The position numbers and the translations under genes were made by a program. This document shows positions 122 to 12,109 of a DNA stretch of 64,000 nucleotides, piece by piece. Within the stretch, counting starts at the first letter, position 1. Every line of letters begins with the position of its first letter. The notes beneath the pieces are model-generated. The model was not told the DNA's origin. It did not search any database and worked only from the letters and a program-made list of their open reading frames with translations. The stretch spans positions 10,726,001 through 10,790,000 of the forward strand of contig OZ249445.1 of the NCBI GenBank assembly GCA_965235115.1, given 5' to 3'. The stretch is from Laetmonice hystrix (lineage: Eukaryota).

Positions 122-277
122 ATATTGCCCCGAATGCTGGAGAGTTTAGGCTTAGCTAGCAAGCCTCAAATGTACTCGCGGTTTGTGGAGGTGTACAAAC
201 AGATGTGGGCATTGAATGGAGACCACGTGAGTCGTATCTATGCCGGAACAGGTGCACTGGGTGGAGGCAAATCAAAG
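122..277 (+). CDS. SYNJ1: Synaptojanin exon: end of SAC1 domain ([10 protein letters not shown]...[20 protein letters not shown])
   Basis: Acceptor ttag at 118-121, donor gtaag at 278, phase 0/0. Confidence 0.95.
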
Positions 278-3200
278 GTAAGATTGCAGAGTAAATGGTT
301 CAGATATTTGTGCTTTTTTTTATTACTTATCTTGGAGGATCTAGGATCTTAAAGAAAGGAGTATCCAAATCTCCAGTGATGTGTTTGCAAAGAGGGTCAA
401 GATTCCCCACTGTCTATCTCACAACACTAAAAACAAGTGTTCTGCATGGAAAAGTCGCCAGAAGAAGCTGGTATTCAAAAATAGTAACATTTCCTTTACT
501 TTCCCCAGATATGAATCCTCATGTTATCTAGACACTGTTCAACATTGCACAGTAAACAGTAGTCAGAGATGGAGACTGGTTATGTTCAAGGGATTGTGAA
601 ACCTTGCAACAAGGTCTTTTCCTGATGGTTTATAACTAGAAATGTTTTTCAGCGTAAGACTGTGATATTTCAGCACTACAATGACGAATTAAGACGAAGT
701 GCCATGGTCCGGCAGCTGGTAATTTTGTAGTAGTAGTAAGATGCAAAATGATTAGGAAGAGATACTCCTTTAAAATAAACGAATTTATAAAGTGATTGTG
801 ACTGATAAAGATCCAAACTGTCCATCACTAACAAGTACTGAAGCATGGAACCATGCATCATAAGTGATGTTATGAATATTGCCTTCTATGCATGGTCGAA
901 TCATTGCTTTGTGCATGATTGCACCAACAGAAGACAAAGCTTGATGGCAACCGTGGCGACAGTTACTAATACCCATCTAAGTTTTGTTTGAAAGGGTCAC
1001 AAGTAATGCCTGTGGAGTGAATGATACGGCTGGGCGAGTTCTTGTCTGTGAAGGGTTTCCAGCATTTCATACAACTCGGAGGCATGGACAGCATTTTGTA
1101 TGTCTGGGAGGCAGGGACAGCCGTGGTTCAGCTGTATGGGTATTCGGGTTGTTCCCCTCAGTCACTTCTGTATTGACTCTAAAATAAACCAGATGGTGAC
1201 GCCCCAGTCAATGAGACATTTGACTAACATTTGTTAGTTAAGCATAATGTATTTGATAGACTCTAAGGTGACTAACATAACGGCCAGTAAACTTTTAATA
1301 GCATTATAAATGGCAGACTGATGCAGAACATTTTTATTCAACTTTCATGGTATGTAGATCCAATGTGAAATAATAGATACAAAATAATTTAAGAATTATA
1401 CCCCAACATTAATCAAAGAGCACTTTATTTTTGCCGTATGAAGGTTCACCAATCGGTATGTGGCCTCCTGCTTACTTATAATCCTCAGTCCCTAGTCCCC
1501 CAGCCCCAGCTCAGGTTGACCTTTGGGAATCCGTGGAGGTTTGGAGGTTAGGAATAATGCCTCTGGTAAATGTTTTGGGGGTTTTTTTTAGTACCAGTAT
1601 TTATGCCAGATCGTAGGGGGATCTTTCTGAAATGTGCAGAAGGCACTGGTTATGTAACATATTTACAGTAAGAAAAGTTAACTTATGTGCATGTCTTTTT
1701 ACCTTATTTTACTCTTTGGATGGTATTATTATCTTGGGCTTAGAAAAGTGATCATTGGGAATGCAATGGAGTTTTTTCCTATTGGTGATGGATTTCATTT
1801 TCATCTCAAAAGAGCATTTTCGGGACATCATCAGGTGCATGTACTGGACCATTGGAGAAGGATCACATTTGTTATTATATTGATAGTGATATACATAAGC
1901 TCTGAAAAAGAAATGTTTTTTTTTAATCAAATACTAATTAAAAAAACACATCTGAAAACACAGAAGTCATTCAAAGAAACATTTACCTTAGATGGCGCTT
2001 GTTTTGAAGAGGTAATATTACTATATCCTCGGGATAGGGTAGAGCACTGTTGGTAGATCTATGGAGAGTACATCAGGAATGTTGACCTATTTTTTGTAGT
2101 GTTCTGATGGTTTTATTTGATTTGCTAGGCAGGGGATGCAGCAAGGTCAGCAACAAGAACAATCCAGAACAACTTCCTCGATACCAGCAAACAGGAGGCC
2201 ATCGACGTGTTGTTGCTAGGCAACACTTTGCGAGGAGACTTGGCTGACAAGGCCAGGGCCCTTCTCTCCAGCTCTAGTCTTCACGGTACGTTACGGAAGA
2301 TCTTTCTTACACACAAAAGTCAACTCAGACTATATGTACATGTACATTTCTTTTAGAATTTGAAGTCATAAGATATTTTGGACTTTTTTTTTTGTAGTAT
2401 GCAGGTATAGAATGCAGTTGTTGAGATTGATGTGTTTGTTGTTGTGGTCATGTAGCGGCACCCAACATCCTCAAGTTGATGATTGGACGACACCCAGACT
2501 ACACCACAGTATCCAACCTACGAGTGGCCTGTGGAACATGGAATGTCAACGGCGGCAAACATTTCCGTAGCATTGCCTACAAACACGAGTTGATCACCGA
2601 TTGGCTCTTAGACTTGCCACAGCTCACCAAGGAGAGCAGACCAGGTAACGTTTACAGGGGTCAATACCAGCTGTCGGGTGTATTCAGTTCTCAATGTTCC
2701 AGGCATTTAAATTTAAAAGTAATTAGTCAATACAAGGCAAATGTGCAAGAGTCCAAGAGCCACCTAACTCTGTCACGGTAATGGACAAAATGTTTTGTCC
2801 CTGTGAGAAAACCATTATCAAAACATTTTGTCCATTACTACGACAGAGTTAGGTAGCTGTTGGACTGTGGCACATTTGCCTCGCATTGACTAGTAAAATT
2901 AAAAGTAAGAGCTTCTTTCCTTAACCAAATCTAACATACTGCACAGTGCACATATATCTAACATTAATATTTTAGCATGAGATATCATAAATTTGCATTC
3001 ATGCCCTTGGGGAAAAGTGATGTTAATTCTGTTATTTTGAAAGACTGGGAAAAACTTATGTAGTGCTCTGTTTCTTTGATTAAAATTCTCTGTTGTGCCG
3101 TTTCTCTTGAAGACCTGATATCACCAGAATGCGACACCAACATCCCTATTGATATGTTTGCCATTGGTTTTGAGGAGATCGTGGATTTGAACGCGAGTAA

Positions 3201-6200
3201 CATCGTCAGTGCCAGGTGTGAATTCGTGACATCTATGCATTAATTATAGATTTAATTAAATTTCTCAAACTCAGTTTAATGTTGATTACTATTTATGTGA
3301 AATTTTTACTCAGAAATGTGTATGTGTCTTTCAGCACCTCAAATCAAAAAGAGTGGGGTGCATTCCTACAGAAGGCTCTCTCCAGGGACCGGAAATACAT
3401 CCTACTGACATCAGCCCAGCTTGTCGGGGTCTGCCTCTTTATCTTTGTAAGGCCCCACCTTGCTCCAATCATAAGGTAACACTCATTTTAAGTGTAATCA
3501 TACAAATAGAGACAACAAAATTGTGATATGTATTAATGGCAGAGATATCTGCCGAACGAATATTCATAGATCTATCACAGTGTTACTCTGAATGCCGTAA
3601 AGCTAAATATTTTTATGCCCAATCAGAGAATTGGGTCTTATGTTACAGTTGCCCTGAACTGTGTTGAGCGAATATTGAATATTGAAACCAAAAAAAAAAT
3701 AGAAGCCCATTATGTTCCATTTTTGTCTGTAAACTTCCAGGGATGTTGCAGTTGATACAGTTAAGACTGGCCTAGGTGGCGCCACGGGAAACAAGGGAGC
3801 AGTTGCTATTCGCTGTATGGTCCACAGCACGTCTCTGTGCTTCATCTGCAGCCATTTTGCTGCTGGACAAAAGGAGTGGAAGGAACGCAATGCAGATTTT
3901 ACTGAAATCTCTCAAAAAATATGTTTTCCAATGGTAAGTCCTTTTTTGTCTGAATACTACAGACTCTTAGAAAAAGATATGCTCCAATAATCTACTTTAA
4001 ATACTTGGAAAAGTAAGTTCCATTAAGTTAAAATAATATCAAGAGAAAGACATTGCTATAGTTGCATAAGTCTCAGAGCCATAAGTCTCAGAGCTAGAGA
4101 ACTGGATTGCTAGAGAAGTAACTTAACAAGACTGATCAAGAATGATTGTGTCCAAGACGTTTGCTTCTTTTATATGATAGATGATAGGTGAAGTCTGTAT
4201 TGATACTAGATATGGTTTTGTAGTGATTTCGGTCAGTCTTTTAGGAGTGTTACATTTCTGTAGATGTCACCCAATGTGAAGTTCTGCTGTCATGTTTTCC
4301 CAGTAGAATTTGAAACTGTTCTGACCTCAGGATATTTTTCAGATAAGTTTCTTTATCAAATTCCCTGGTGATATTTAACATAGATTTTGTGTGCACATGT
4401 ATGCAGGTTGTCAGCCTATCTATACCGGTGATGCAATTTTATGAGTTAATCATTAATGGTGAGATGTAACACTTTCTGTCTTTTTTCCTGCAGGAGTTTT
4501 GCAGGGTAGGTTTTTCTTGCATAGTTTCACGTTTTTGGTATACCCCTGACATGCCTGAACTAATGCATTGACCTGTAGCGTGATGAACCCAGATCCAGTC
4601 AAAGTCAGGCTGACCAGGCTTCAGTTAATGCCAAAGAGTCGGTATAATACTTATGTGCTTGGAACATTAATTTGGCATATGATGTATTGATTTGTGTGAA
4701 AGAAGAAATTTCTGTTGGATCATGACTTTTAGTTTGGATGAGAGCACTGCTTGTAAATGGTGCAGAACCTTACACAGCCATATGTATAGGTACTTCCTCT
4801 AGTGGAATGGGCTGCATCGTAACTTCTCCCAGAAAACCCATGAATAATGCATGCAATATGCTTGAATATACGCATATTATTATAAATGTTGTGCATGAGA
4901 CTGATAGCCTACCATCCAGAGAATTGTGTAGGCGGGGTAAAAGGTGAAATCATTAATTACAAAGTTTATAAAAGGATTGCTGGGAATGCATTATTTCATC
5001 CTGGTCATCAGCTATGAAAAAAAGACGGCGCTTTCATGTCTTTGAAAATTCTTTACATTATGGTCTCGTCCATTAGAGTATCTATTGATAGAGTTTCCAT
5101 TCTGATTTATGAATGTTTGGTGCAGTGTAGAACCCTTAGTTCATAGTTTATTGGTTTTCAGGCTTACTATGTAGGCCTACTCTTGCATGAGATACCAATA
5201 GATTCAGTTGGTGCATGTGTTTTAATCAGACAGTTATCAATTTGAAATTGTGATTTCTGTACTTGGCGTTGATCAGAATTCTGCTTTCATTTTGACCTTT
5301 AGTAGAAAATCTTGTCAGTGATAAGCACAGTAAACTGATAGAGCATAGAACTTTCTCTAGAAACGGTATTGTCTAGAAAACCACATTTGGTATTGTTGTA
5401 AATGTTTCATGGTCTTGAAAGCTCTTATCAAATGCAGCAGATTGAGCCTTTGGTGTTGACTTTAGCCAGAGGATCAACAAGGTATCATCACTGGCAAGAC
5501 TCTCACTTTGAGTACATTGTAGTTTGTGAAATGTTCACTAGGTGGTCGCTCTTGCATCACCTTCAAGTTCTCTGGTACCCAGGCACAGTGAGATATGGAG
5601 CAAGACTGTTGAGTCTTCCTCCAGGAAATTAGAAGAAGCAGACACTGGAAATTGTTTGCACTAATAAAGGTGTTTGTCTTTTCTATGTATCAGTCAGTGT
5701 TTACTGTGTTGGACACAGTACACAGTTGTTGTTACTGAGATCACGTAGCTGATCTTTGTGTCATCCAGGCCCGCTCCATCTGGTCACATGACTACATCTT
5801 CTGGTGTGGCGACTTCAACTACCGGATTGACTTGACCAATGCCGAGGTGAAGGAGCTGATATCACAGGAGAACTGGGGAGCACTGCAGGCCTGCGACCAG
5901 CTCAACAAACAGAGGGAGGCTGGCAATGCAAGTACATTCAGCTCTCTACTAATGGTTGAGAGTCAACCAGATTACAAACAGTTGTGTCCAGGGTGCTAGT
6001 GGTAGTAATATAGTTAGTAACAGATTTTATTTGGAATGCATGTATTTGGAGTTTCCTTATAATATCATAATAACAAGTTGGCATATGATGAGTATAACAT
6101 ATATAATTGCATATTATAAATACGTATCTGTATTTTGTTTTCGTCGGCAGGTGTTCAAAGGGTTTGAAGAGGGGCAAACCAATTTTGCGCCAACATATAA

Positions 6201-9200
6201 GTACGACCTTTTCTGTGATGACTATGACACCAGTGATAAACACAGAACACCAGCATGGACAGACCGGGTCTTGTGGAGGAGGCGCCCTCTCCCTCGGCAG
6301 AAAGGTACTCTACTAATTCTGTCTATAAATCAAATTATTAACCAAATCAGGACAATTAGTACAAATTTTGGTTGATTCACATGTAAAATATTCTCAATTA
6401 TCATTTTCTGTGATGTTGTCTTAAGAGCCAAAAATTTTGGGCCGATAGGTCCACCTCCAACTTTTTCGGGTCTCCAACCACCCCTGATGTTTCTGCAGTT
6501 TTCTTTTTTTTGTCAACTACCCCCGGTAATGCATATTTTTAGCTTTAGGAATAGTTAAGTTATGGTCTGATAACTAGATCAATTTCATCCCATGGCCTGT
6601 GTCAGTTTGTGCATGGCTTGCAACTATAGAAGATTTCTTTTTTTCTGTACCCCTACCATTGATCATGTTTGTCTTCTTTCCAACTCCAAGTAATCCCAAT
6701 TAATAATTTTGCTTTTGTTTCAACCTTCTAAAGGTTCTAAATAAAATTTTGTGAAATAGTTTTAAAAGATCTATTTCCTTTGCAGAGTATGAAATTTGCC
6801 TTCACTATTACACCAATCCTCTTAGACAGCTAACCATTGCTAAAATAGCATTCGCAAAATTTAAGGTTGTGAAATTTTTCAAGCGTGCAGAATTCACAAA
6901 CTGTAAATACCGGTATATACCGGTACTTGGAAGTTTGATTAGAAGCATGATTTATTTTACATAGTAGCAGTTAATGATGTTTTCAACATTTATTTTTCCT
7001 TCTGTTGTATTCGCCACATTATTTTGTTGATTTGTTTATGATTTGCTGATGTTTAGATGATGAGCTGTCTTCAGAAGCTGAAAGTGTTTGTGGTGAGTTT
7101 GCCCAGTCCATGTCAGTATTGATTTTCCATCTGTGCTGCCAACTATTGGGTTACTACAGCAGGCCTGTAACTTGGTAGATGGTGCGGATGGGTGGGAGGG
7201 AGCGGGGGTGATGATATTGATGCCGATATTGTCCAAACTTTCCACTCTAAGAGTTTATTAGAATAAAGACAGAAAAAAGAGCTTCTGATGTATCATTTTA
7301 AAGGCAGGTCATAGGGTTTGGGTTGAAGGTTGCACCTACTTTGTCATGTAACTTGCTGTATGAAGTTCTGCTATCTTTGCCCACACACATACTACAGGGA
7401 AATACTACTGGATTGCTGATGTTGATGTTTGAACATTAGAAAATATATTGAATTATTTTAAAATAACCTGTAACTTTGCAATATTTTTACACTAACATAG
7501 GAAGTAAGTCAATAATCAAATTCATATTTTTTTGCATTGTGTAGGTAGACCAAAGAAATAATGTGGCTGTTCTCATAATCCTTTATGCATGTCTATACCT
7601 GTATTGTAGGAAGTACCACTTAATGACAAACTTAAAGAAGACAAGATTTTAGTCTGAAAGCTGTCAGCAAGTTCAAAGAATTGTTTCCCACCCCAGTCGA
7701 AATGTATAAAGGATCATTTGAACATGCCATCCTCCCATATCTGACTGTTGATCCCTCTCTGACTTTATGAACACCATCTCATCTGTTCTTCTGTGCATGT
7801 CTCCCTGGAAATTGTGGGCATGAAAGTAATACACAGTACAAGTCTTTTCTGACTAGGGTTAAATATTTATACCTAAATTAGCCATTTTAAAATGTACAGT
7901 TTCATGTTTTATGAATTTTGAGCATTTGTATGTGTGTGTGTGTTTGTAGTGTAAACTGGTCATTGGGTGATTACCAGATTGAGTGATTAGAACATTGTAT
8001 TCTGTACTCTCTAATTATATCCTTTAGCTCTCTCATAGTTTTACGAAAGTCAGGTACTTAGATATACAGTTTTCTACCATTGTTTTTTACTGCTGTAGTA
8101 TAGCTTAAGATTTCCTCATAGACACATGTACCAAATCTTGCAATTATGATAGAAAAATCTCATCGATTTATCTGAGGTTTTCATGAGCCAGGATTCTCTC
8201 CTGAGATCAGTATCTCAGAAGTCAAGGTTCATTCTTGGCTATAATGATGATGACACCATTGTCGTTTCAGTGTAAGTACCTGGTATTGTTGGTAGCTATT
8301 GTTGGTAGTCTTTGTACTGTATATGCCAAAAAGAAGTGCAGTGAAAACAGTTTTCATCGTCTTAACAAATGCTTTTTTTGTTGAATCGCTAAAGAAAAAG
8401 TTATACACTGTTTCTGTACAATCCAGACTTGGATCAGTTCCTGCACTGGAACCCTGGCAAGCTGCTGCTCTATAACCGGGCCGAGTTCAAGACGTCAGAC
8501 CATCGGTGAGTACCTGTACTTCACGCATCTGATTGTATAGAAGTGGAATGCTTGGACCCTGCACCAAATGGCACAAAGGGAAGTAGACTATAGGTACAGT
8601 GAAGTATTTCCCGAAAAGTTACAATACCCATTGACCTCAGTGACCTTAAAAAAGAACTCTAGGGAAGAGCCACACTCCCTGCCCCTGGTATTGATTCATT
8701 GTAGAGCGCCTGCAAACATACCCATTAAATTTACCATCACCGTTACATTCTGGTTCATTGTGACCTTACAGGCCAGTGATGGCCATCCTGGATGTGGAGG
8801 TGCTGACCCTGGATGACGAGAGACGTCAGCAAGTATATGAGGAGGTGATCGCCCAGCAAGGTCCTCCAGACAGCACCATTGTGGTATCCCTGACAAACCA
8901 GGAGGAGGAGGAGGAGTTCAATGATGACACTGTAGACCGGATACTGGCTGCGTTTGGGGAGATCGGCGAGATAATCCTTGTTAGGTAAGGTTGTCACATA
9001 CTCGTCAAGATTGGCTGGGGTTTAGGAATGGAAGGTGAAGCGAATGCAGGTGGAAAGTAAACGACTCAAATGATAAAATAAAAATATGATTGTCTGACTG
9101 CCATGTCAATTTTGGTCTCTTGGTAGTCAGTTTATGAGTGCTCCTAAAACTCTGAATGGAGTGTGCGATTCACTCTAACTTAGCCTCAGTATGTTGTGGT

Positions 9201-12109
9201 TTCTTGCAGGTTTGTGGACAACAACATGTTACTCACCTTTAGATTTGGCCAGATCGCACTGCAAGCAATCAAACTTAACCAGACTAAGGTGAGAATTTTA
9301 TCATTGATCAAAGATTCAAAGATCATTTTGGCAGTATGTTAGGGACTGATAAACCTATCAAAAATAAGAGAAGAAGTAGATAATGAGCTGTGCCTGTTAT
9401 TTGATTGTACAAGTATACCCACGTGGAGTAGAGTATAGCTGTCTGTATGTTAGTGTTACCTGTCCACTGACTGATGTGTGATGTCAGATTGGAGATCACA
9501 TCCTGAGTGTCCAACTCAACACGCCGCACTGGGAGGACCAGATCCAGAAGGAGATGTCACTATGTAATGCCAACACGACGGCACTCTACGATAACCTCAG
9601 CAACAGTCTGCTAACTGAGGATTTCTCCATCCCTACCATGTCCTTCGACATGGACGGTACGTACAGCATGTCGCTTTCAGTGTTTGCTGTGTGCTGTCTT
9701 ACCTTAGTACTGCATGGTAGCACTGCATCCAATGTGCTTCAAACAATAAATCAATTCTATGCAGCTTACCGGTAATATCTGACCTAATTATTCATCGAAT
9801 GATCCTGACTGGAAGCCAGGACATGAAGGGCTATGTTACCATTTATAGGAATTCTAGGGAAATTTAGTTCTTCAATTGTCAGAGAATCTTCAGATGTGGG
9901 AGACATGATTGGACCTGTTGATTGAAAATTGTTTGTCTTACACAGATGGTGATGATGAAGAGGTTGCAGGCCTGATGATAGAGGGCACCACCAGTGGAAG
10001 AAGGTCCCGTAGTGCCAGTCCTTGCCGCTCAAGTAAGTATTCATATATTCAGTAGAGATTACAATAATTTGATATTTTCATATACCACGGATCAAAGAGA
10101 TAATGACTTCACCAATGATAACACAAAATGGTGTCCTATTTACAGGAGGAAGCAGTCCTCAGCCTGGCTATGACCCATCGTCCCAGGCGATCCGACCATC
10201 TCAGCCTCCAGCCAGGCCGGCCTCTCCACGGCTACCTCCGGCACGCCCTGCTGTGTCTCCCTCTCAGCCACCGCCAGGGAATGACATCGTTGTCCCTCAG
10301 GTTGAGCCAGTGTTTGCAGCTCAGCCACCCAGCACAGAACCTCAGGTCAGTTTGATGTTACGTAAAGAGGCTACCTTTTGAAGATGCTACATGGCTCGGT
10401 ATTACATATAACAATACAGCTGATAAAGGTGTAGTGAGAGAGGCTTGGCCACATATATGATAGTCCTAGCTTCTTTCAGAATAGTAGTCTGCTCATTCAG
10501 GTATCAGGTTAAAGAAAGGTATAGAGAAGATTGTTTTTGTGGTAATAGGACCAACAAGTTATATGTTTTTTTTTTTAATCTGACGGTGACAGAAGCCAGA
10601 GAAGCCTAGGCCCCCTCGCCCCGGAGCACCTCCCAGCCGGCCACCTCCACCATCCCGTCCTCCAGGTGTTCCCGTGAGGTCAGCGGCAGGAGCAGCTGTA
10701 TGTCCTGGATCTCCCAGTAGGGGGCACCACGAACATGCACCAGGCTCCCCAGGGCGAAGTCGACCAGAAAAAACAAGACAGCCCATGCGGCCACACATGA
10801 TGCCAAAGTCCAAAAAGGTCATTAGTCCATATTCTATACAGTTCTATCCATTGTTTAGCAATCATATAAAATCAACTGACCGATTTCATATTTTTTAGGA
10901 CTATTAATTTTGAGCTTAGAATAAAATAAGATATGTGCTATTTGTTACAGATTGGACAAATAGGTCTTCCCACGAATGTTGCTCACACGGGACATGCACG
11001 AAGTGTTGAAGAGGCTGAGAGACTGATACAGAACCTGATGGCACAGACTGCATCAGTCGACAACCCGACACTGCCTGCACCTCTCCAGCCAGGTGAATAA
11101 CCTATTTTACCAAAACAAGTGAAGAAATAAACTGTTTATGAAAATGTGGACAGCTACCCGTTTATTCCTCTGTCATAAAGTTTTTTTCATTATAATGTGT
11201 ATGGTTACATTTTTCCTAGCCTCTACACCTCCTGACGGACAGTCCACAGGTTTAGAAGCACCTACGATCCCACGCACTCGGAGTGCTGTCGACTTCTCCA
11301 CAGTGAATGGTGGCTTACCCCCGAAACCATTGCCTCGTCACCAGAGTGAAGACAACCTGGCAGCTGCTGCTGAAGCAGACCAACCAAACCAGACTGAGGA
11401 GACGGCTGTGCCAACTCCTCGGCCAAGGACAAGAAAGGGCGCCAGCGAGGACAAGTCTTCTCCTGCTACGCCTGTCAATGAAATCCTAGTTCCCTCGCCT
11501 CTGGACACCTCCATCCCTGGAGTCAATGACGAACCATTGATTCCATCTCCTGAAGATGGACCAAATGTTGCCAATCGTGGGCCGCCACCTGCAGTACCTG
11601 CGGTAGGTCCAAGTGCTGACCCTCCAGTGCCCCAGTCCAGAGGGCCACCACCAGCAGTTCCTCCAGCAAACTTCTCCAGGGGAGCACCACCTCCAGTACC
11701 TCCTACCCGCCCTGTTGCCCTGACTGGATCTGCTGTAAGAGAACCCCCTGTACCTGCTCCCAGGAAGACACTGTCATGTGATGAGGATGGCACCCCATCA
11801 CCGTCCGATCAGGCTATTCCCCCTAGGCCTGCCTACGTCCCACCCCCCATAGAAACCCCGCCTCCACCCCCGAGAACAGCCTCAGACCTCGGCAGCCCGG
11901 GAATGGAGTGCCCGCCCCCACCAGATATGTCCCCACCCCCACTTCCCAATGACGGTCCGGACACTAACGGAGTATGTGACCAACCCGGAGCCACTGGTCT
12001 GCCAACTGTTCCTCCTCGGCCCAGTGTGGTTCCAATGCCCGCTCTGAACCCAACCCCTCCAGTCGCCCGGGGCCCCCCACCAATCCCACCACGTCATGAC
12101 CTTGCCTAA
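122..12109 (+). CDS. SYNJ1: Synaptojanin-1-like polyphosphoinositide phosphatase, 5'-partial spliced gene (17 exons in window)
   Basis: Exons 122-277, 2129-2285, 2456-2644, 3113-3215, 3335-3475, 3741-3933, 5769-5927, 6151-6304, 8427-8505, 8772-8984, 9210-9288, 9488-9656, 9946-10032, 10146-10345, 10593-10817, 10951-11092, 11220-12109. Intron phases all match and the frame stays open to TAA at 12107-12109. Motifs: [12 protein letters not shown] and RTIQNNF (SAC1 end), [53 protein letters not shown] (5-phosphatase), [10 protein letters not shown] (RRM-like), proline-rich tail. Confidence 0.97.
2129..2285 (+). CDS. SYNJ1: Synaptojanin exon ([32 protein letters not shown]...)
   Basis: ctag| acceptor, |gtacg donor; closely resembles the vertebrate SYNJ1 SAC1-phosphatase linker. 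Confidence 0.95.
2456..2644 (+). CDS. SYNJ1: Synaptojanin exon: start of 5-phosphatase domain ([16 protein letters not shown])
   Basis: tgtag| acceptor, |gtaac donor, phase 1/1. Confidence 0.95.
2762..2854. repeat. Intronic inverted repeat / hairpin (about 36-bp arms, about 21-nt loop)
   Basis: acctaactctgtcacggtaatggacaaaatgttttg ... caaaacattttgtccattactacgacagagttaggt. Confidence 0.85.
3113..3215 (+). CDS. SYNJ1: Synaptojanin exon ([23 protein letters not shown])
   Basis: gaag| acceptor, |gtgtg donor, conserved GFEEIVDL motif. Confidence 0.93.
3335..3475 (+). CDS. SYNJ1: Synaptojanin exon ([18 protein letters not shown]...[13 protein letters not shown])
   Basis: ttcag| acceptor, |gtaac donor, phase 2/2. 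Confidence 0.95.
3741..3933 (+). CDS. SYNJ1: Synaptojanin exon ([24 protein letters not shown]...CSHFAAGQ)
   Basis: ccag| acceptor, |gtaag donor, conserved GNKG motif. Confidence 0.96.
5769..5927 (+). CDS. SYNJ1: Synaptojanin exon ([16 protein letters not shown]...[11 protein letters not shown]), GC donor
   Basis: ccag| acceptor; catalytic GDFNYRI motif; frame joins the next exon at a |gcaagt donor. Confidence 0.92.
6151..6304 (+). CDS. SYNJ1: Synaptojanin exon (VFKGFEEG...PTYKYD...PAWTDRVLW)
   Basis: ggcag| acceptor, |gtact donor; second catalytic motif. Confidence 0.96.
7057..7092 (+). CDS. SYNJ1: Probable 36-nt cassette mini-exon of synaptojanin ([12 protein letters not shown])
   Basis: T-rich tract plus tttag| acceptor, perfect |gtgagt donor, phase 1/1, open frame; falls in a variable loop of the phosphatase domain. 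Confidence 0.6.
8427..8505 (+). CDS. SYNJ1: Synaptojanin exon ([20 protein letters not shown])
   Basis: ccag| acceptor, |gtgag donor, SDH motif. Confidence 0.95.
8772..8984 (+). CDS. SYNJ1: Synaptojanin exon: end of phosphatase and start of RRM-like domain ([10 protein letters not shown]...[10 protein letters not shown]...GEIILVR)
   Basis: acag| acceptor, |gtaag donor. Confidence 0.95.
9210..9288 (+). CDS. SYNJ1: Synaptojanin exon, RRM-like domain ([19 protein letters not shown])
   Basis: gcag| acceptor, |gtgag donor. Confidence 0.92.
9488..9656 (+). CDS. SYNJ1: Synaptojanin exon ([15 protein letters not shown]...[16 protein letters not shown])
   Basis: tcag| acceptor, |gtacg donor. Confidence 0.92.
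9946..10032 (+). CDS. SYNJ1: Synaptojanin exon, acidic/Ser-rich linker
   Basis: acag| acceptor, |gtaagt donor, phase 1/1. Confidence 0.85.
10146..10345 (+). CDS. SYNJ1: Synaptojanin exon, proline-rich tail
   Basis: acag| acceptor, |gtcagt donor; PPARP repeats. Confidence 0.88.
10593..10817 (+). CDS. SYNJ1: Synaptojanin exon, proline-rich tail ending in basic KSKK
   Basis: acag| acceptor, |gtcat donor, phase 0/0. Confidence 0.85.
10951..11092 (+). CDS. SYNJ1: Synaptojanin exon carrying CRIB-like motif ([30 protein letters not shown]...)
   Basis: ttacag| acceptor, |gtgaa donor, phase 0/1 bridges the flanking exons. Confidence 0.85.
11220..12109 (+). CDS. SYNJ1: Synaptojanin terminal coding exon, proline-rich, ends ...[11 protein letters not shown]
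   Basis: ttttcctag| acceptor, 890 nt open frame, TAA at 12107-12109. Confidence 0.92.

What the first reader, a model, noticed from the sequence alone, without database searches (positions are those of the whole stretch)
10806..11040. Synaptojanin with a CRIB-like (Cdc42/Rac-binding) motif in its tail
Seen: the spliced protein reads KSKK|[30 protein letters not shown], a non-proline island in the proline-rich tail (core at 10960-10998) followed by a likely amphipathic helix. Known: the CRIB consensus is I-S/G-x-P-x2-4-F-x-H-x-x-H-V-G, often preceded by a basic patch as in PAK and WASP; ACK has HTGH. Here I, G, P, H and H match, with F replaced by V and VG by AR. I know of no canonical CRIB in vertebrate SYNJ1; SYNJ2 is a reported Rac1 effector through a non-CRIB region. 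Inference: a direct Rho-GTPase-to-PI(4,5)P2 phosphatase link in this lineage, encoded on its own exon.
Basis: partly seen in the sequence, partly recalled or inferred. Interest (0 to 1): 0.8.

Follow-up and report, generated by a model that had tools for sequence, protein, structure and literature searches.

The report
CRIB-like motif in invertebrate synaptojanin tail
A small exon in the tail of this animal's synaptojanin gene encodes a short motif that closely resembles the site other proteins use to bind active Cdc42/Rac; the motif is conserved from molluscs to sea urchins, which suggests an undescribed but still unproven link between Rho GTPases and this lipid phosphatase.

Summary
Window 10951-11092 (+) is a 142-nt exon with AG/GT borders in the proline-rich tail of a synaptojanin gene. 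After a KSKK patch from the previous exon it reads [17 protein letters not shown], then a helix and LPAPLQP.

It is not chance. Relatives of the exon occur in synaptojanin-1 of gastropods, bivalves, a chiton, octopus, a brachiopod, a nemertean, hemichordates and echinoderms. In 58 distinct copies the most conserved positions are the CRIB consensus positions: I, G/S, P and the first H 58/58, V 56/58, the second H 56/58.

Support for CRIB-likeness:
- A profile of the motif matches a profile of eight true CRIBs from the same genome (hhalign 95%, E 2.6e-8).
- An HMM of those CRIBs ranks this exon first against a 268,000-residue background.
- The genome's CDC42SE-like CRIB is 11/14 identical.

Against membership: Pfam PBD stays below its cut-off (11 of 32 orthologues sub-threshold, the window's copy none), HVG is replaced by HA, and the PBD beta-hairpin is missing.

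A predicted complex with Cdc42-GTP gave weak support (0.49 against 0.00 for controls). Binding is untested, and no RNA data exist for this species.

The motif was not found in the vertebrate SYNJ1 or arthropod proteins sampled. Vertebrate SYNJ2 could not be checked.

The parts
122..9658 (+). Upstream exons of the same synaptojanin gene: end of the Sac1 domain, 5-phosphatase domain, RRM-like DUF1866 domain. The N-terminal part lies outside the window.
   Evidence: tblastn of named synaptojanin-1 orthologues (Lingula P0056, chiton P0040, Lineus P0053) gives collinear HSPs covering orthologue residues ~400-1000; ORF fragments.
10593..10817 (+). Proline-rich tail exon ending in the basic patch (my reading of the acceptor at 10590-10592; phase 0 at both ends).
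   Evidence: Sequence and translation ([25 protein letters not shown]...MMPKSKK). It resembles the RPGAPPxKPPPPQRP stretch just upstream of the motif in P0014 and P0021. The 5' border was not verified with RNA.
10806..10817 (+). Basic patch KSKK directly upstream of the motif.
   Evidence: K/R/Q-rich columns precede the motif in orthologues. hhalign aligns this stretch with the basic stretch before true CRIBs.
10951..11092 (+). Motif exon, 142 nt, with ag/gt borders, phase 0 in and phase 1 out.
   Evidence: An intron lies at the same place (three residues before the motif Ile, with a read-through ...Q from the cag acceptor) in at least 12 genomic ORF hits from other genomes. Unique in the own genome.
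10960..11001 (+). CRIB-like core [14 protein letters not shown].
   Evidence: Top hit (23.1 bits, iE 4.7e-6) of an HMM of the genome's own CRIBs; 21.0 bits without the CDC42SE-like sequence. hhalign 95.2%. 11/14 identical to L011 [15 protein letters not shown]. Predicted coil when folded alone.
11005..11049 (+). Amphipathic alpha-helix [15 protein letters not shown].
   Evidence: AlphaFold2 on alignment A1: helix at residues 19-33, block pLDDT about 89. Ala 58/58, Leu 52/58 and Leu 56/58 across orthologues.
11071..11091 (+). Second conserved element, LPAPLQP (LPxP[LM]xP), at the 3' end of the exon. Function unknown; possibly an SH3-type ligand.
   Evidence: Recurs at the same distance in mollusc and brachiopod orthologues and in genomic exon ORFs.
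11220..12109 (+). Last proline-rich exon seen (many PxxP sites) up to the stop codon.
   Evidence: The frame continues from the motif exon. No homologues were found with this exon alone.

Best explanation
The exon encodes a divergent, short CRIB-type motif: a basic patch, then I-[G/S]-x-P-x-x-[V/F]-x-H-x-x-H-A, then directly an amphipathic helix. It sits in the disordered proline-rich tail of synaptojanin, a Sac1 plus 5-phosphatase enzyme that removes PI(4,5)P2. The most likely mechanism is that the extended core pairs with strand beta2 and switch I of GTP-bound Cdc42 or a close relative (Rac, TC10-type), as CRIBs of PAK, WASP, ACK and CDC42SE do. The upstream lysines would help on acidic membranes, and the helix would add contacts in place of the beta-hairpin and helix of a full PBD. 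This would bring or hold the phosphatase where the GTPase is active, coupling Rho-GTPase and actin signalling to local PI(4,5)P2 breakdown. Shown here: the exon, its conservation, its sequence and profile likeness to true CRIBs, and the coil-plus-helix prediction. Inferred: GTPase binding, which GTPase, and any effect on recruitment or activity.
For: Conservation:
- The exon is conserved in synaptojanin-1 of Mollusca, Brachiopoda, Nemertea, Hemichordata and Echinodermata.
- In 58 distinct copies, I, G/S, P and the first H are 58/58, V 56/58 (one F, one A), the second H 56/58 and the following A 56/58.
- Deuterostome copies read ISTPFEFNHDIHA (crinoid) and ISKPFEVSHKAHA (starfish), nearer to the consensus ISxPxxFxHxxH.

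Likeness to true CRIBs:
- hhalign of the motif profile A1 against A2 (eight CRIB exons of the same genome, found with Pfam PBD): probability 95.2%, E 2.6e-8, 22 columns including the basic stretch.
- Column-shuffled A1 scored mean 7.6, maximum 21.5, against a real score of 35.8 (0 of 300 reached it).
- An HMM of those CRIBs ranks the window exon first among 268,284 background residues. The next ~55 hits are all synaptojanin motifs, and the best unrelated hit scores 6.0-6.6 bits. This holds with or without the nearly identical CDC42SE-like sequence.
- A true PBD of this genome (L001, 59 bits) also has G at the S position and V at the F position.
- Pfam PBD is the family that most A1 members touch: 11 of 32, best E 0.0038, HMM positions 2-14.
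- The A1 profile picks out the CRIB cores of N-WASP, PAK1 and PAK4 chains among its 11 PDB hits, at a non-significant E of about 1.

Structure predictions:
- Predicted complex with a 191-aa Cdc42 (residues 1-179) plus GTP and Mg: ipSAE 0.49 (0.48/0.50/0.49) against a best control of 0.00. Runs agree in at least 91% of contacts and the partner pLDDT is at least 75. The tool's verdict is 'weak support': the mark was reached by 51 of 78 solved complexes and 2 of 108 mismatched pairs, but scores of 0.60 or under came from only 5 of those 78 and from all 4 mismatches that passed.
- Folded alone, residues 1-18 are coil and 19-33 are helix.

Expression in relatives: the motif is present in mRNA-like contigs of a relative assembled in four sequencing runs.
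Against: - Pfam PBD never reaches its 21.3-bit cut-off, and the window's own peptide gives no hit even at E<=10. The genome-wide PBD search did not pick up the exon.
- The consensus V-G after the second His is A-[S/T/K/R] in essentially all copies.
- The roughly 10-residue beta-hairpin of the PBD is absent, and the helix does not align with the PBD helix: hhalign aligns only 22 columns.
- Two orthologues have lost the second His while keeping the helix (Solemya HxxT, Lineus HxxC), so the helix may be the more constrained part in those lineages.
- The complex score is in the band the tool calls weak. Peptides are outside its calibration, and solved CRIB-Cdc42 complexes could be recalled 'from memory'.
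- The PDB matches are not significant. One of 300 column shuffles of A2 exceeded the real hhalign score (an outlier of 132).
- The alignment A1 and the motif HMM were seeded with a regex that required the CRIB pattern, so their 'invariant' columns are partly by construction. The unbiased phmmer hits show the same pattern.
- No RNA run exists for this organism, so inclusion of the exon here is unproven.
- No binding experiment was found in the literature searched.
Confidence: 0.52

Rival explanations
1. It is a conserved short linear motif plus helix with a partner other than a Rho GTPase, such as an endocytic adaptor or an intramolecular, autoregulatory contact with the Sac1 or 5-phosphatase domain. 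On this reading the likeness to CRIB is convergent.
For: Pfam PBD is below its cut-off and gives nothing on the window copy. HVG and the beta-hairpin are missing. The helix (A 58/58, L 56/58) is as conserved as the core and survives in the two orthologues that lost the second His. The complex prediction is only weak.
Against: The positions kept over the protostome-deuterostome split are just those of the CRIB consensus. Profile-profile and HMM tests single it out against true CRIBs. The deuterostome form moves towards the consensus, not away from it. No other Pfam family is touched by more than 2 of 32 members.
Confidence: 0.33
2. It is a metal- or pH-sensing histidine motif (HxxH with nearby acidic residues) that tunes tail conformation or membrane binding, and is unrelated to GTPases.
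For: There are two near-invariant His three residues apart, followed by a conserved acidic pair. In many copies the residue after the first His is also His (17 of 58).
Against: This does not explain the invariant I-[G/S]-x-P and V upstream, or the match to CRIB profiles over 22 columns. Two His alone make a poor metal site. No metal-binding family was hit.
Confidence: 0.05
3. It is a chance resemblance in a lineage-specific or unexpressed exon with no function.
For: There is no RNA evidence for this species. The 13-residue core alone cannot reach significance in PDB or Pfam searches.
Against: The exon and its intron position are conserved across several phyla. It is present in RefSeq-type models and in mRNA-like contigs of relatives. 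Skipping the 142-nt exon would truncate the protein.
Confidence: 0.03

Closest known systems
CRIB of CDC42SE/SPEC small effectors (own-genome copy at locus L011)
   Same: A basic run followed by [15 protein letters not shown], 11 of 14 residues identical to the window's [14 protein letters not shown]. Both are short linear motifs without a full PBD. That CDC42SE proteins bind Cdc42 through this motif is from my own knowledge, not tested here.
   Different: L011 keeps F and H-I-G. The synaptojanin motif has V and H-A-R and is followed by a helix. The host protein is a 1,300-1,600-residue lipid phosphatase, not a roughly 80-residue adaptor.
P21-Rho-binding domain (Pfam PF00786) of PAK, WASP/N-WASP and ACK
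   Same: The core pattern I-S/G-x-P-x-x-F/V-x-H-x-x-H after a basic region. Sub-threshold PBD hits fall on HMM positions 2-14. PAK1, PAK4 and N-WASP CRIB chains appear in the PDB profile search.
   Different: The score is below the gathering cut-off. V-G is replaced. The beta-hairpin and the PBD helix that contact the switch regions are missing, and a different helix follows after three residues.
Par6 semi-CRIB
   Same: It is a precedent for a partial CRIB that still binds Cdc42 (my own knowledge).
   Different: Par6 lacks the two His and needs its adjacent PDZ domain. Here both His are kept and no folded domain is adjacent.
Rac1-binding domain in the C-terminal region of vertebrate synaptojanin 2
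   Same: It is a Rho-family GTPase binding site in the tail of a synaptojanin. SYNJ2, but not SYNJ1, is reported to have it (PMC3547897, citing Malecz et al. 2000).
   Different: The vertebrate SYNJ1 isoforms sampled lack the motif.

Membership tests
CRIB / PBD (Pfam PF00786; consensus I-S-x-P-x(2,4)-F-x-H-x(2)-H-V-G) | Consensus residues I, S (or G), P, H and H at the right spacing | tested here: met
   The window reads [12 protein letters not shown]. Across 58 copies, I, G/S, P and the first H are 58/58 and the second H is 56/58.
CRIB / PBD (Pfam PF00786; consensus I-S-x-P-x(2,4)-F-x-H-x(2)-H-V-G) | Aromatic F before the first His | tested here: inconclusive
   V in 56 of 58 copies and F in the crinoid. 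A true PBD of the same genome (L001, 59 bits) also has V there.
CRIB / PBD (Pfam PF00786; consensus I-S-x-P-x(2,4)-F-x-H-x(2)-H-V-G) | V-G (or I-G) after the second His, leading into the beta-hairpin and helix of the full domain | tested here: not met
   A-R in the window and A-[S/T/K/N/R] in orthologues. The helix starts three residues after the motif. hhalign aligns only the first 22 columns.
CRIB / PBD (Pfam PF00786; consensus I-S-x-P-x(2,4)-F-x-H-x(2)-H-V-G) | Score over Pfam's gathering cut-off (21.3 bits) | tested here: not met
   The window peptide gives no hit at E<=10. Orthologues reach 12.7-13.1 bits. 11 of 32 are sub-threshold, best E 0.0038. The exon was not found by the PBD search of the own genome.
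CRIB / PBD (Pfam PF00786; consensus I-S-x-P-x(2,4)-F-x-H-x(2)-H-V-G) | Profile-level likeness to bona fide CRIBs, including the preceding basic region | tested here: met
   hhalign 95.2%, E 2.6e-8. Shuffle controls. Top hit of the own-genome CRIB HMM at 23.1 or 21.0 bits.
CRIB / PBD (Pfam PF00786; consensus I-S-x-P-x(2,4)-F-x-H-x(2)-H-V-G) | GTP-dependent binding to Cdc42 or Rac | not testable with these tools
   Only an in-silico complex was possible: ipSAE 0.49 against a best control of 0.00, verdict 'weak support'. The mark was reached by 51 of 78 solved complexes and 2 of 108 mismatches; scores of 0.60 or under are weak.
Synaptojanin (Sac1 + inositol 5-phosphatase + RRM-like domain + proline-rich tail) | Collinear Sac1, 5-phosphatase and DUF1866 exons upstream of the tail on the same strand | tested here: met
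   tblastn of named orthologues carrying PF02383, PF22669 and PF08952 gives collinear HSPs at 122-9658. Only the end of the Sac domain lies inside the window.
Synaptojanin (Sac1 + inositol 5-phosphatase + RRM-like domain + proline-rich tail) | Motif exon spliced into the synaptojanin mRNA | tested here: inconclusive
   No RNA run exists for this organism. The splice sites and frame fit. In relatives the motif lies inside full-length models and mRNA-like contigs.

The most novel reading that the evidence does not exclude
The synaptojanin of the bilaterian ancestor was a direct, GTP-dependent effector of Cdc42/Rac through a minimal CRIB-plus-helix module on its own exon. The module is kept in spiralians and ambulacrarians and was lost in arthropods and vertebrate SYNJ1. 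The Rac1-binding site of vertebrate SYNJ2 may be its remnant. If so, Rho GTPases would switch PI(4,5)P2 removal on at the same membrane patches where they drive actin assembly.
Probability: 0.4. Interest if true: 0.78.

Novelty: new variant of a known kind. Interest (0 to 1): 0.62.

Why it matters
Synaptojanin is the main PI(4,5)P2 phosphatase of endocytosis and synaptic vesicle recycling. Its tail is thought of as a string of SH3 and adaptor ligands.

A conserved CRIB-type site would add a direct input from Cdc42/Rac. It would give a simple route for negative feedback on PI(4,5)P2-dependent actin assembly. It would also offer an evolutionary origin to test for the long-known but unmapped Rac1-synaptojanin 2 interaction in vertebrates.

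The idea is directly testable with a roughly 50-residue peptide and standard GTPase pull-downs. The motif defines a compact CRIB variant (core plus helix, no beta-hairpin) that current domain models miss.

Tried and rejected
- Last proline-rich exon (11222-12106) as a search query: no homologue at E<=1e-3.
- RNA evidence: both run searches returned only DNA-type contigs of one sample. Laying X1, X3 and X4 showed unspliced genomic contigs and no joints, so expression here is unknown.
- The top three phmmer hits (P0001-P0003) are bacterial TPR/CHAT repeat proteins that match the helix part repeatedly. P0018 and P0023 are low-complexity repeats. All were rejected as spurious.
- PDB profile search: the best hits are helices of V-ATPase subunit F. 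The CRIB chains appear only at E about 1, so this was not used as evidence of homology.
- ESM Atlas look-up of the exon: no usable hit.
- Cluster look-up gave almost no taxon names for the short genomic ORF hits, so the species of the window and of many hits remain unnamed. The window's synaptojanin is about 60% identical to chiton, scallop, nemertean and brachiopod proteins, hence a spiralian of a group not among the named hits.
- The Cdc42 of the own genome is split into exons (L052). An intronless Rho gene (L014) is RhoA/B-like and unsuitable. A full-length Cdc42 ORF from a metatranscriptome contig (L078) was used instead.
- Malecz et al. 2000 is not held in the paper library.
- Complex prediction gave 'weak support' only and returned no interface. 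Rac could not be tried.
Full report
**What is in the window.**
On the + strand, an exon ending ...MMPKSKK at 10817 (followed by gt) is followed by a 133-nt intron. The next exon is 142 nt long (10951-11092, ag...gt). It reads [47 protein letters not shown] plus one base. The next exon (from 11220) continues the frame through 296 proline-rich residues to a stop at 12107-12109. Upstream, collinear exons at 122-9658 match the end of the Sac1 domain, the 5-phosphatase domain and the RRM-like domain of named synaptojanin-1 proteins, at 50-87% identity per exon. Because the exon is 142 nt, skipping it alone would shift the frame and end the protein 11 codons later (read). The exon occurs once in the 627-Mb genome.

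**Is it more than chance?**
phmmer with the 47-residue exon against 1.84 billion representative proteins gave 28 hits at E<=1e-3. Five are spurious: bacterial TPR/CHAT repeats that match the helix, and two low-complexity proteins. The others are synaptojanin tails (P0014, P0019, P0021) or short ORFs called on genomic DNA. Those ORFs start with a read-through ...Q of a cag acceptor and then read I-x-x-IG[LVM]PT[NQ]VxHxxHA...EEAxxLIxxLM...LPxPLxP. This shows the same exon with the same intron position in many genomes.

Searches with the Biomphalaria protein P0014 returned named orthologues. The motif is present in:
- gastropods, bivalves, a chiton and Octopus;
- the brachiopod Lingula;
- two hemichordates, a crinoid, two starfish and two sea urchins.

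Patella, Solemya and the nemertean Lineus carry variant copies. A motif HMM found nothing in about 70 vertebrate SYNJ1 isoforms, four insects, a pycnogonid, a holothurian model or a partial amphioxus model. In sea urchins, one predicted isoform lacks a 160-residue block that begins three residues before the motif Ile. A relative's full-length protein with the motif (P0058) sits on 5-kb contigs with UTR-like flanks, assembled in four sequencing runs. These are mRNA-like. No RNA run exists for the window's own organism.

**Which positions are conserved.**
In 58 distinct copies aligned to the motif HMM:

| Position | Count |
|---|---|
| I | 58/58 |
| G or S | 58/58 (G 46, S 12) |
| P | 58/58 |
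| V | 56/58 (F once, A once) |
| first H | 58/58 |
| second H | 56/58 |
| following A | 56/58 |
| helix Ala | 58/58 |
| two helix Leu | 52/58 and 56/58 |

An S/T/N position and an acidic pair lie between the core and the helix. The invariant set is therefore the CRIB consensus set I-S/G-x-P-x-x-F/V-x-H-x-x-H. The ambulacrarian copies (ISTPFEFNHDIHA, ISKPFEVSHKAHA, ISTPYDVAHSGHA) are closer to the textbook consensus than the window's copy. One caveat applies: alignment A1 and the motif HMM were seeded with a regex that demanded this pattern. The regex-free phmmer hits show the same residues, and the HMM also recovered the three variant copies.

**Tests against real CRIBs.**
- Pfam PBD (PF00786) does not reach its 21.3-bit cut-off on any copy. 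The window peptide gives no hit at E<=10. The crinoid and Octopus give 12.7 and 13.1 bits on HMM positions 2-14. Of the 32 members of A1, 11 touch PBD (best E 0.0038), and no other family is touched by more than two.
- A PBD search of the window's own genome found 11 CRIB exons, but not this one. Among them is a CDC42SE-like peptide, [24 protein letters not shown], which is 11/14 identical to the window core. Another is a strong PBD (59 bits) reading IGEPMNVKHEWHVG, which has G and V at the 'S' and 'F' positions.
- I aligned eight of these as A2. hhalign of A1 against A2 gave probability 95.2%, E 2.6e-8 and score 35.8 over 22 columns, basic stretch included.
- With A1 columns shuffled, the score was 7.6 +/- 2.0, maximum 21.5 (0 of 300 reached the real score). 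With A2 columns shuffled, 1 of 300 exceeded it, an outlier of 132.
- An HMM built only from the own-genome CRIBs was searched against all six-frame ORFs of the window plus every fetched protein (268,284 residues). It put the window exon first (23.1 bits, iE 4.7e-6). About 55 synaptojanin motifs followed. The best unrelated hit scored 6.0 bits.
- Leaving out the CDC42SE-like sequence changed little: 21.0 bits, with the best unrelated hit at 6.6.
- The A1 profile against PDB sequences lists the CRIB cores of N-WASP (8s5t), PAK1 (1e0a_B) and PAK4 (5upk) among 11 hits, but at E about 1, which is not significant.

**Structure predictions.**
AlphaFold2 on A1 predicts residues 1-18 as coil and 19-33 ([15 protein letters not shown]) as a helix, with mean pLDDT 73.5. 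This fits a linear motif followed by an amphipathic helix.

For a complex I needed an unspliced Cdc42. The genome's own gene is split into exons (L052). I therefore took a 191-residue ORF from a metatranscriptome contig (L078:133-705), which differs at 2 of the first 96 residues from the own exons.

The complex was Cdc42(1-179) plus GTP plus Mg plus the 34-residue peptide:
- ipSAE was 0.48, 0.50 and 0.49, against a best control of 0.00.
- The runs agree in at least 91% of contacts, and the partner pLDDT is at least 75.
- The tool's verdict is 'weak support'. The mark was reached by 51 of 78 solved complexes and 2 of 108 mismatched pairs. Scores of 0.60 or under came from only 5 of those 78 and from all 4 passing mismatches.
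- Peptides and ligand-bearing jobs lie outside the calibration, and solved CRIB-Cdc42 complexes may be recalled from memory.

This raises my odds a little. It is not evidence of binding.

**Interpretation.**
The best reading (about 0.5) is a divergent minimal CRIB. It keeps the strand-forming I-S/G-x-P, the hydrophobic position, both His and the basic lead-in. It replaces H-V-G and the PBD beta-hairpin with H-A-[S/T] and an immediate helix. By analogy with PAK, WASP, ACK and CDC42SE (established knowledge, not tested here), it would bind GTP-loaded Cdc42 or a close relative. That would localise or hold synaptojanin where the GTPase is active and promote local PI(4,5)P2 removal.

The main rival (about 0.33) is a conserved motif plus helix with another partner or an autoregulatory role. 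Three things favour it: the failed Pfam threshold, the missing hairpin, and the two orthologues that lost the second His but kept the helix. A histidine metal or pH sensor and a chance resemblance are unlikely.

**Comparison with what is known.**
I found no paper describing a CRIB in any synaptojanin. Vertebrate SYNJ2, but not SYNJ1, is reported to carry a Rac1-binding domain in its C-terminal region (PMC3547897, citing Malecz et al. 2000). The original paper is not held, and I could not fetch a SYNJ2 sequence. Whether that site descends from this motif is open and is the most interesting follow-up. I could not check whether automatic PROSITE or SMART annotation already flags these proteins.

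The distribution across spiralians and ambulacrarians implies presence in their common ancestor, with loss in the arthropods and vertebrate SYNJ1 sampled.

**Verdict.**
The feature is real, conserved and CRIB-like by several independent sequence tests. It is not a member of Pfam PBD by that family's own threshold, and its function is unproven. I class it as a new variant of a known kind, of moderate to high interest.

Noticed in passing
window 11071-11091: A second conserved element, LPxP[LM]xP (here LPAPLQP), closes the motif exix in molluscs, the brachiopod and many genomic exon ORFs. It always lies about 10-20 residues after the helix. It may be an SH3-type or other ligand that works together with the CRIB-like core.
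   Followed up: partly
P0072 versus P0073 (sea urchin synaptojanin-1 isoforms), residues about 1128-1290 of P0072: The predicted isoform X2 lacks a 160-residue block that starts three residues before the motif Ile. This suggests regulated inclusion of the motif in echinoderms.
   Followed up: partly
L001/L002 (G000:C13:3939037-3939875, minus strand): Two PBD matches lie about 600 bp apart. One is a strong PBD with the unusual core IGEPMNVKHEWHVG (V in place of F). The first match contains stop codons, which may be an intron or a tandem arrangement.
   Followed up: no
L014 (G000:C11:19871882-19872523, minus strand): An intronless RhoA/B-like GTPase ORF of 214-217 residues lies on the same chromosome-scale contig as the window. 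Several other Ras-superfamily genes in this genome are also single-exon.
   Followed up: no
L007 (G000:C3:12347456-12347665, minus strand): One ORF carries two CRIB cores 33 residues apart (ISAPSNFAHVSHVG and ISGPTNFSHIAHIG). This is a double-CRIB protein of unknown identity.
   Followed up: no
P0001-P0003 (bacterial TPR/CHAT proteins): The helix half of the exon ([16 protein letters not shown]) repeatedly matches the TPR repeat unit ...RYARTGQLADLEEAIRVYQQAV..., which produced the three best phmmer E-values. This is a reminder that the top hits of a short query can be repeat artefacts.
   Followed up: yes
P0036 (Haliotis cracherodii 'synaptojanin-2-like', 2239 aa): This gene model fuses synaptojanin domains with protein-kinase domains (PF07714/PF00069) and lacks the motif. 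It is probably a merged prediction.
   Followed up: no
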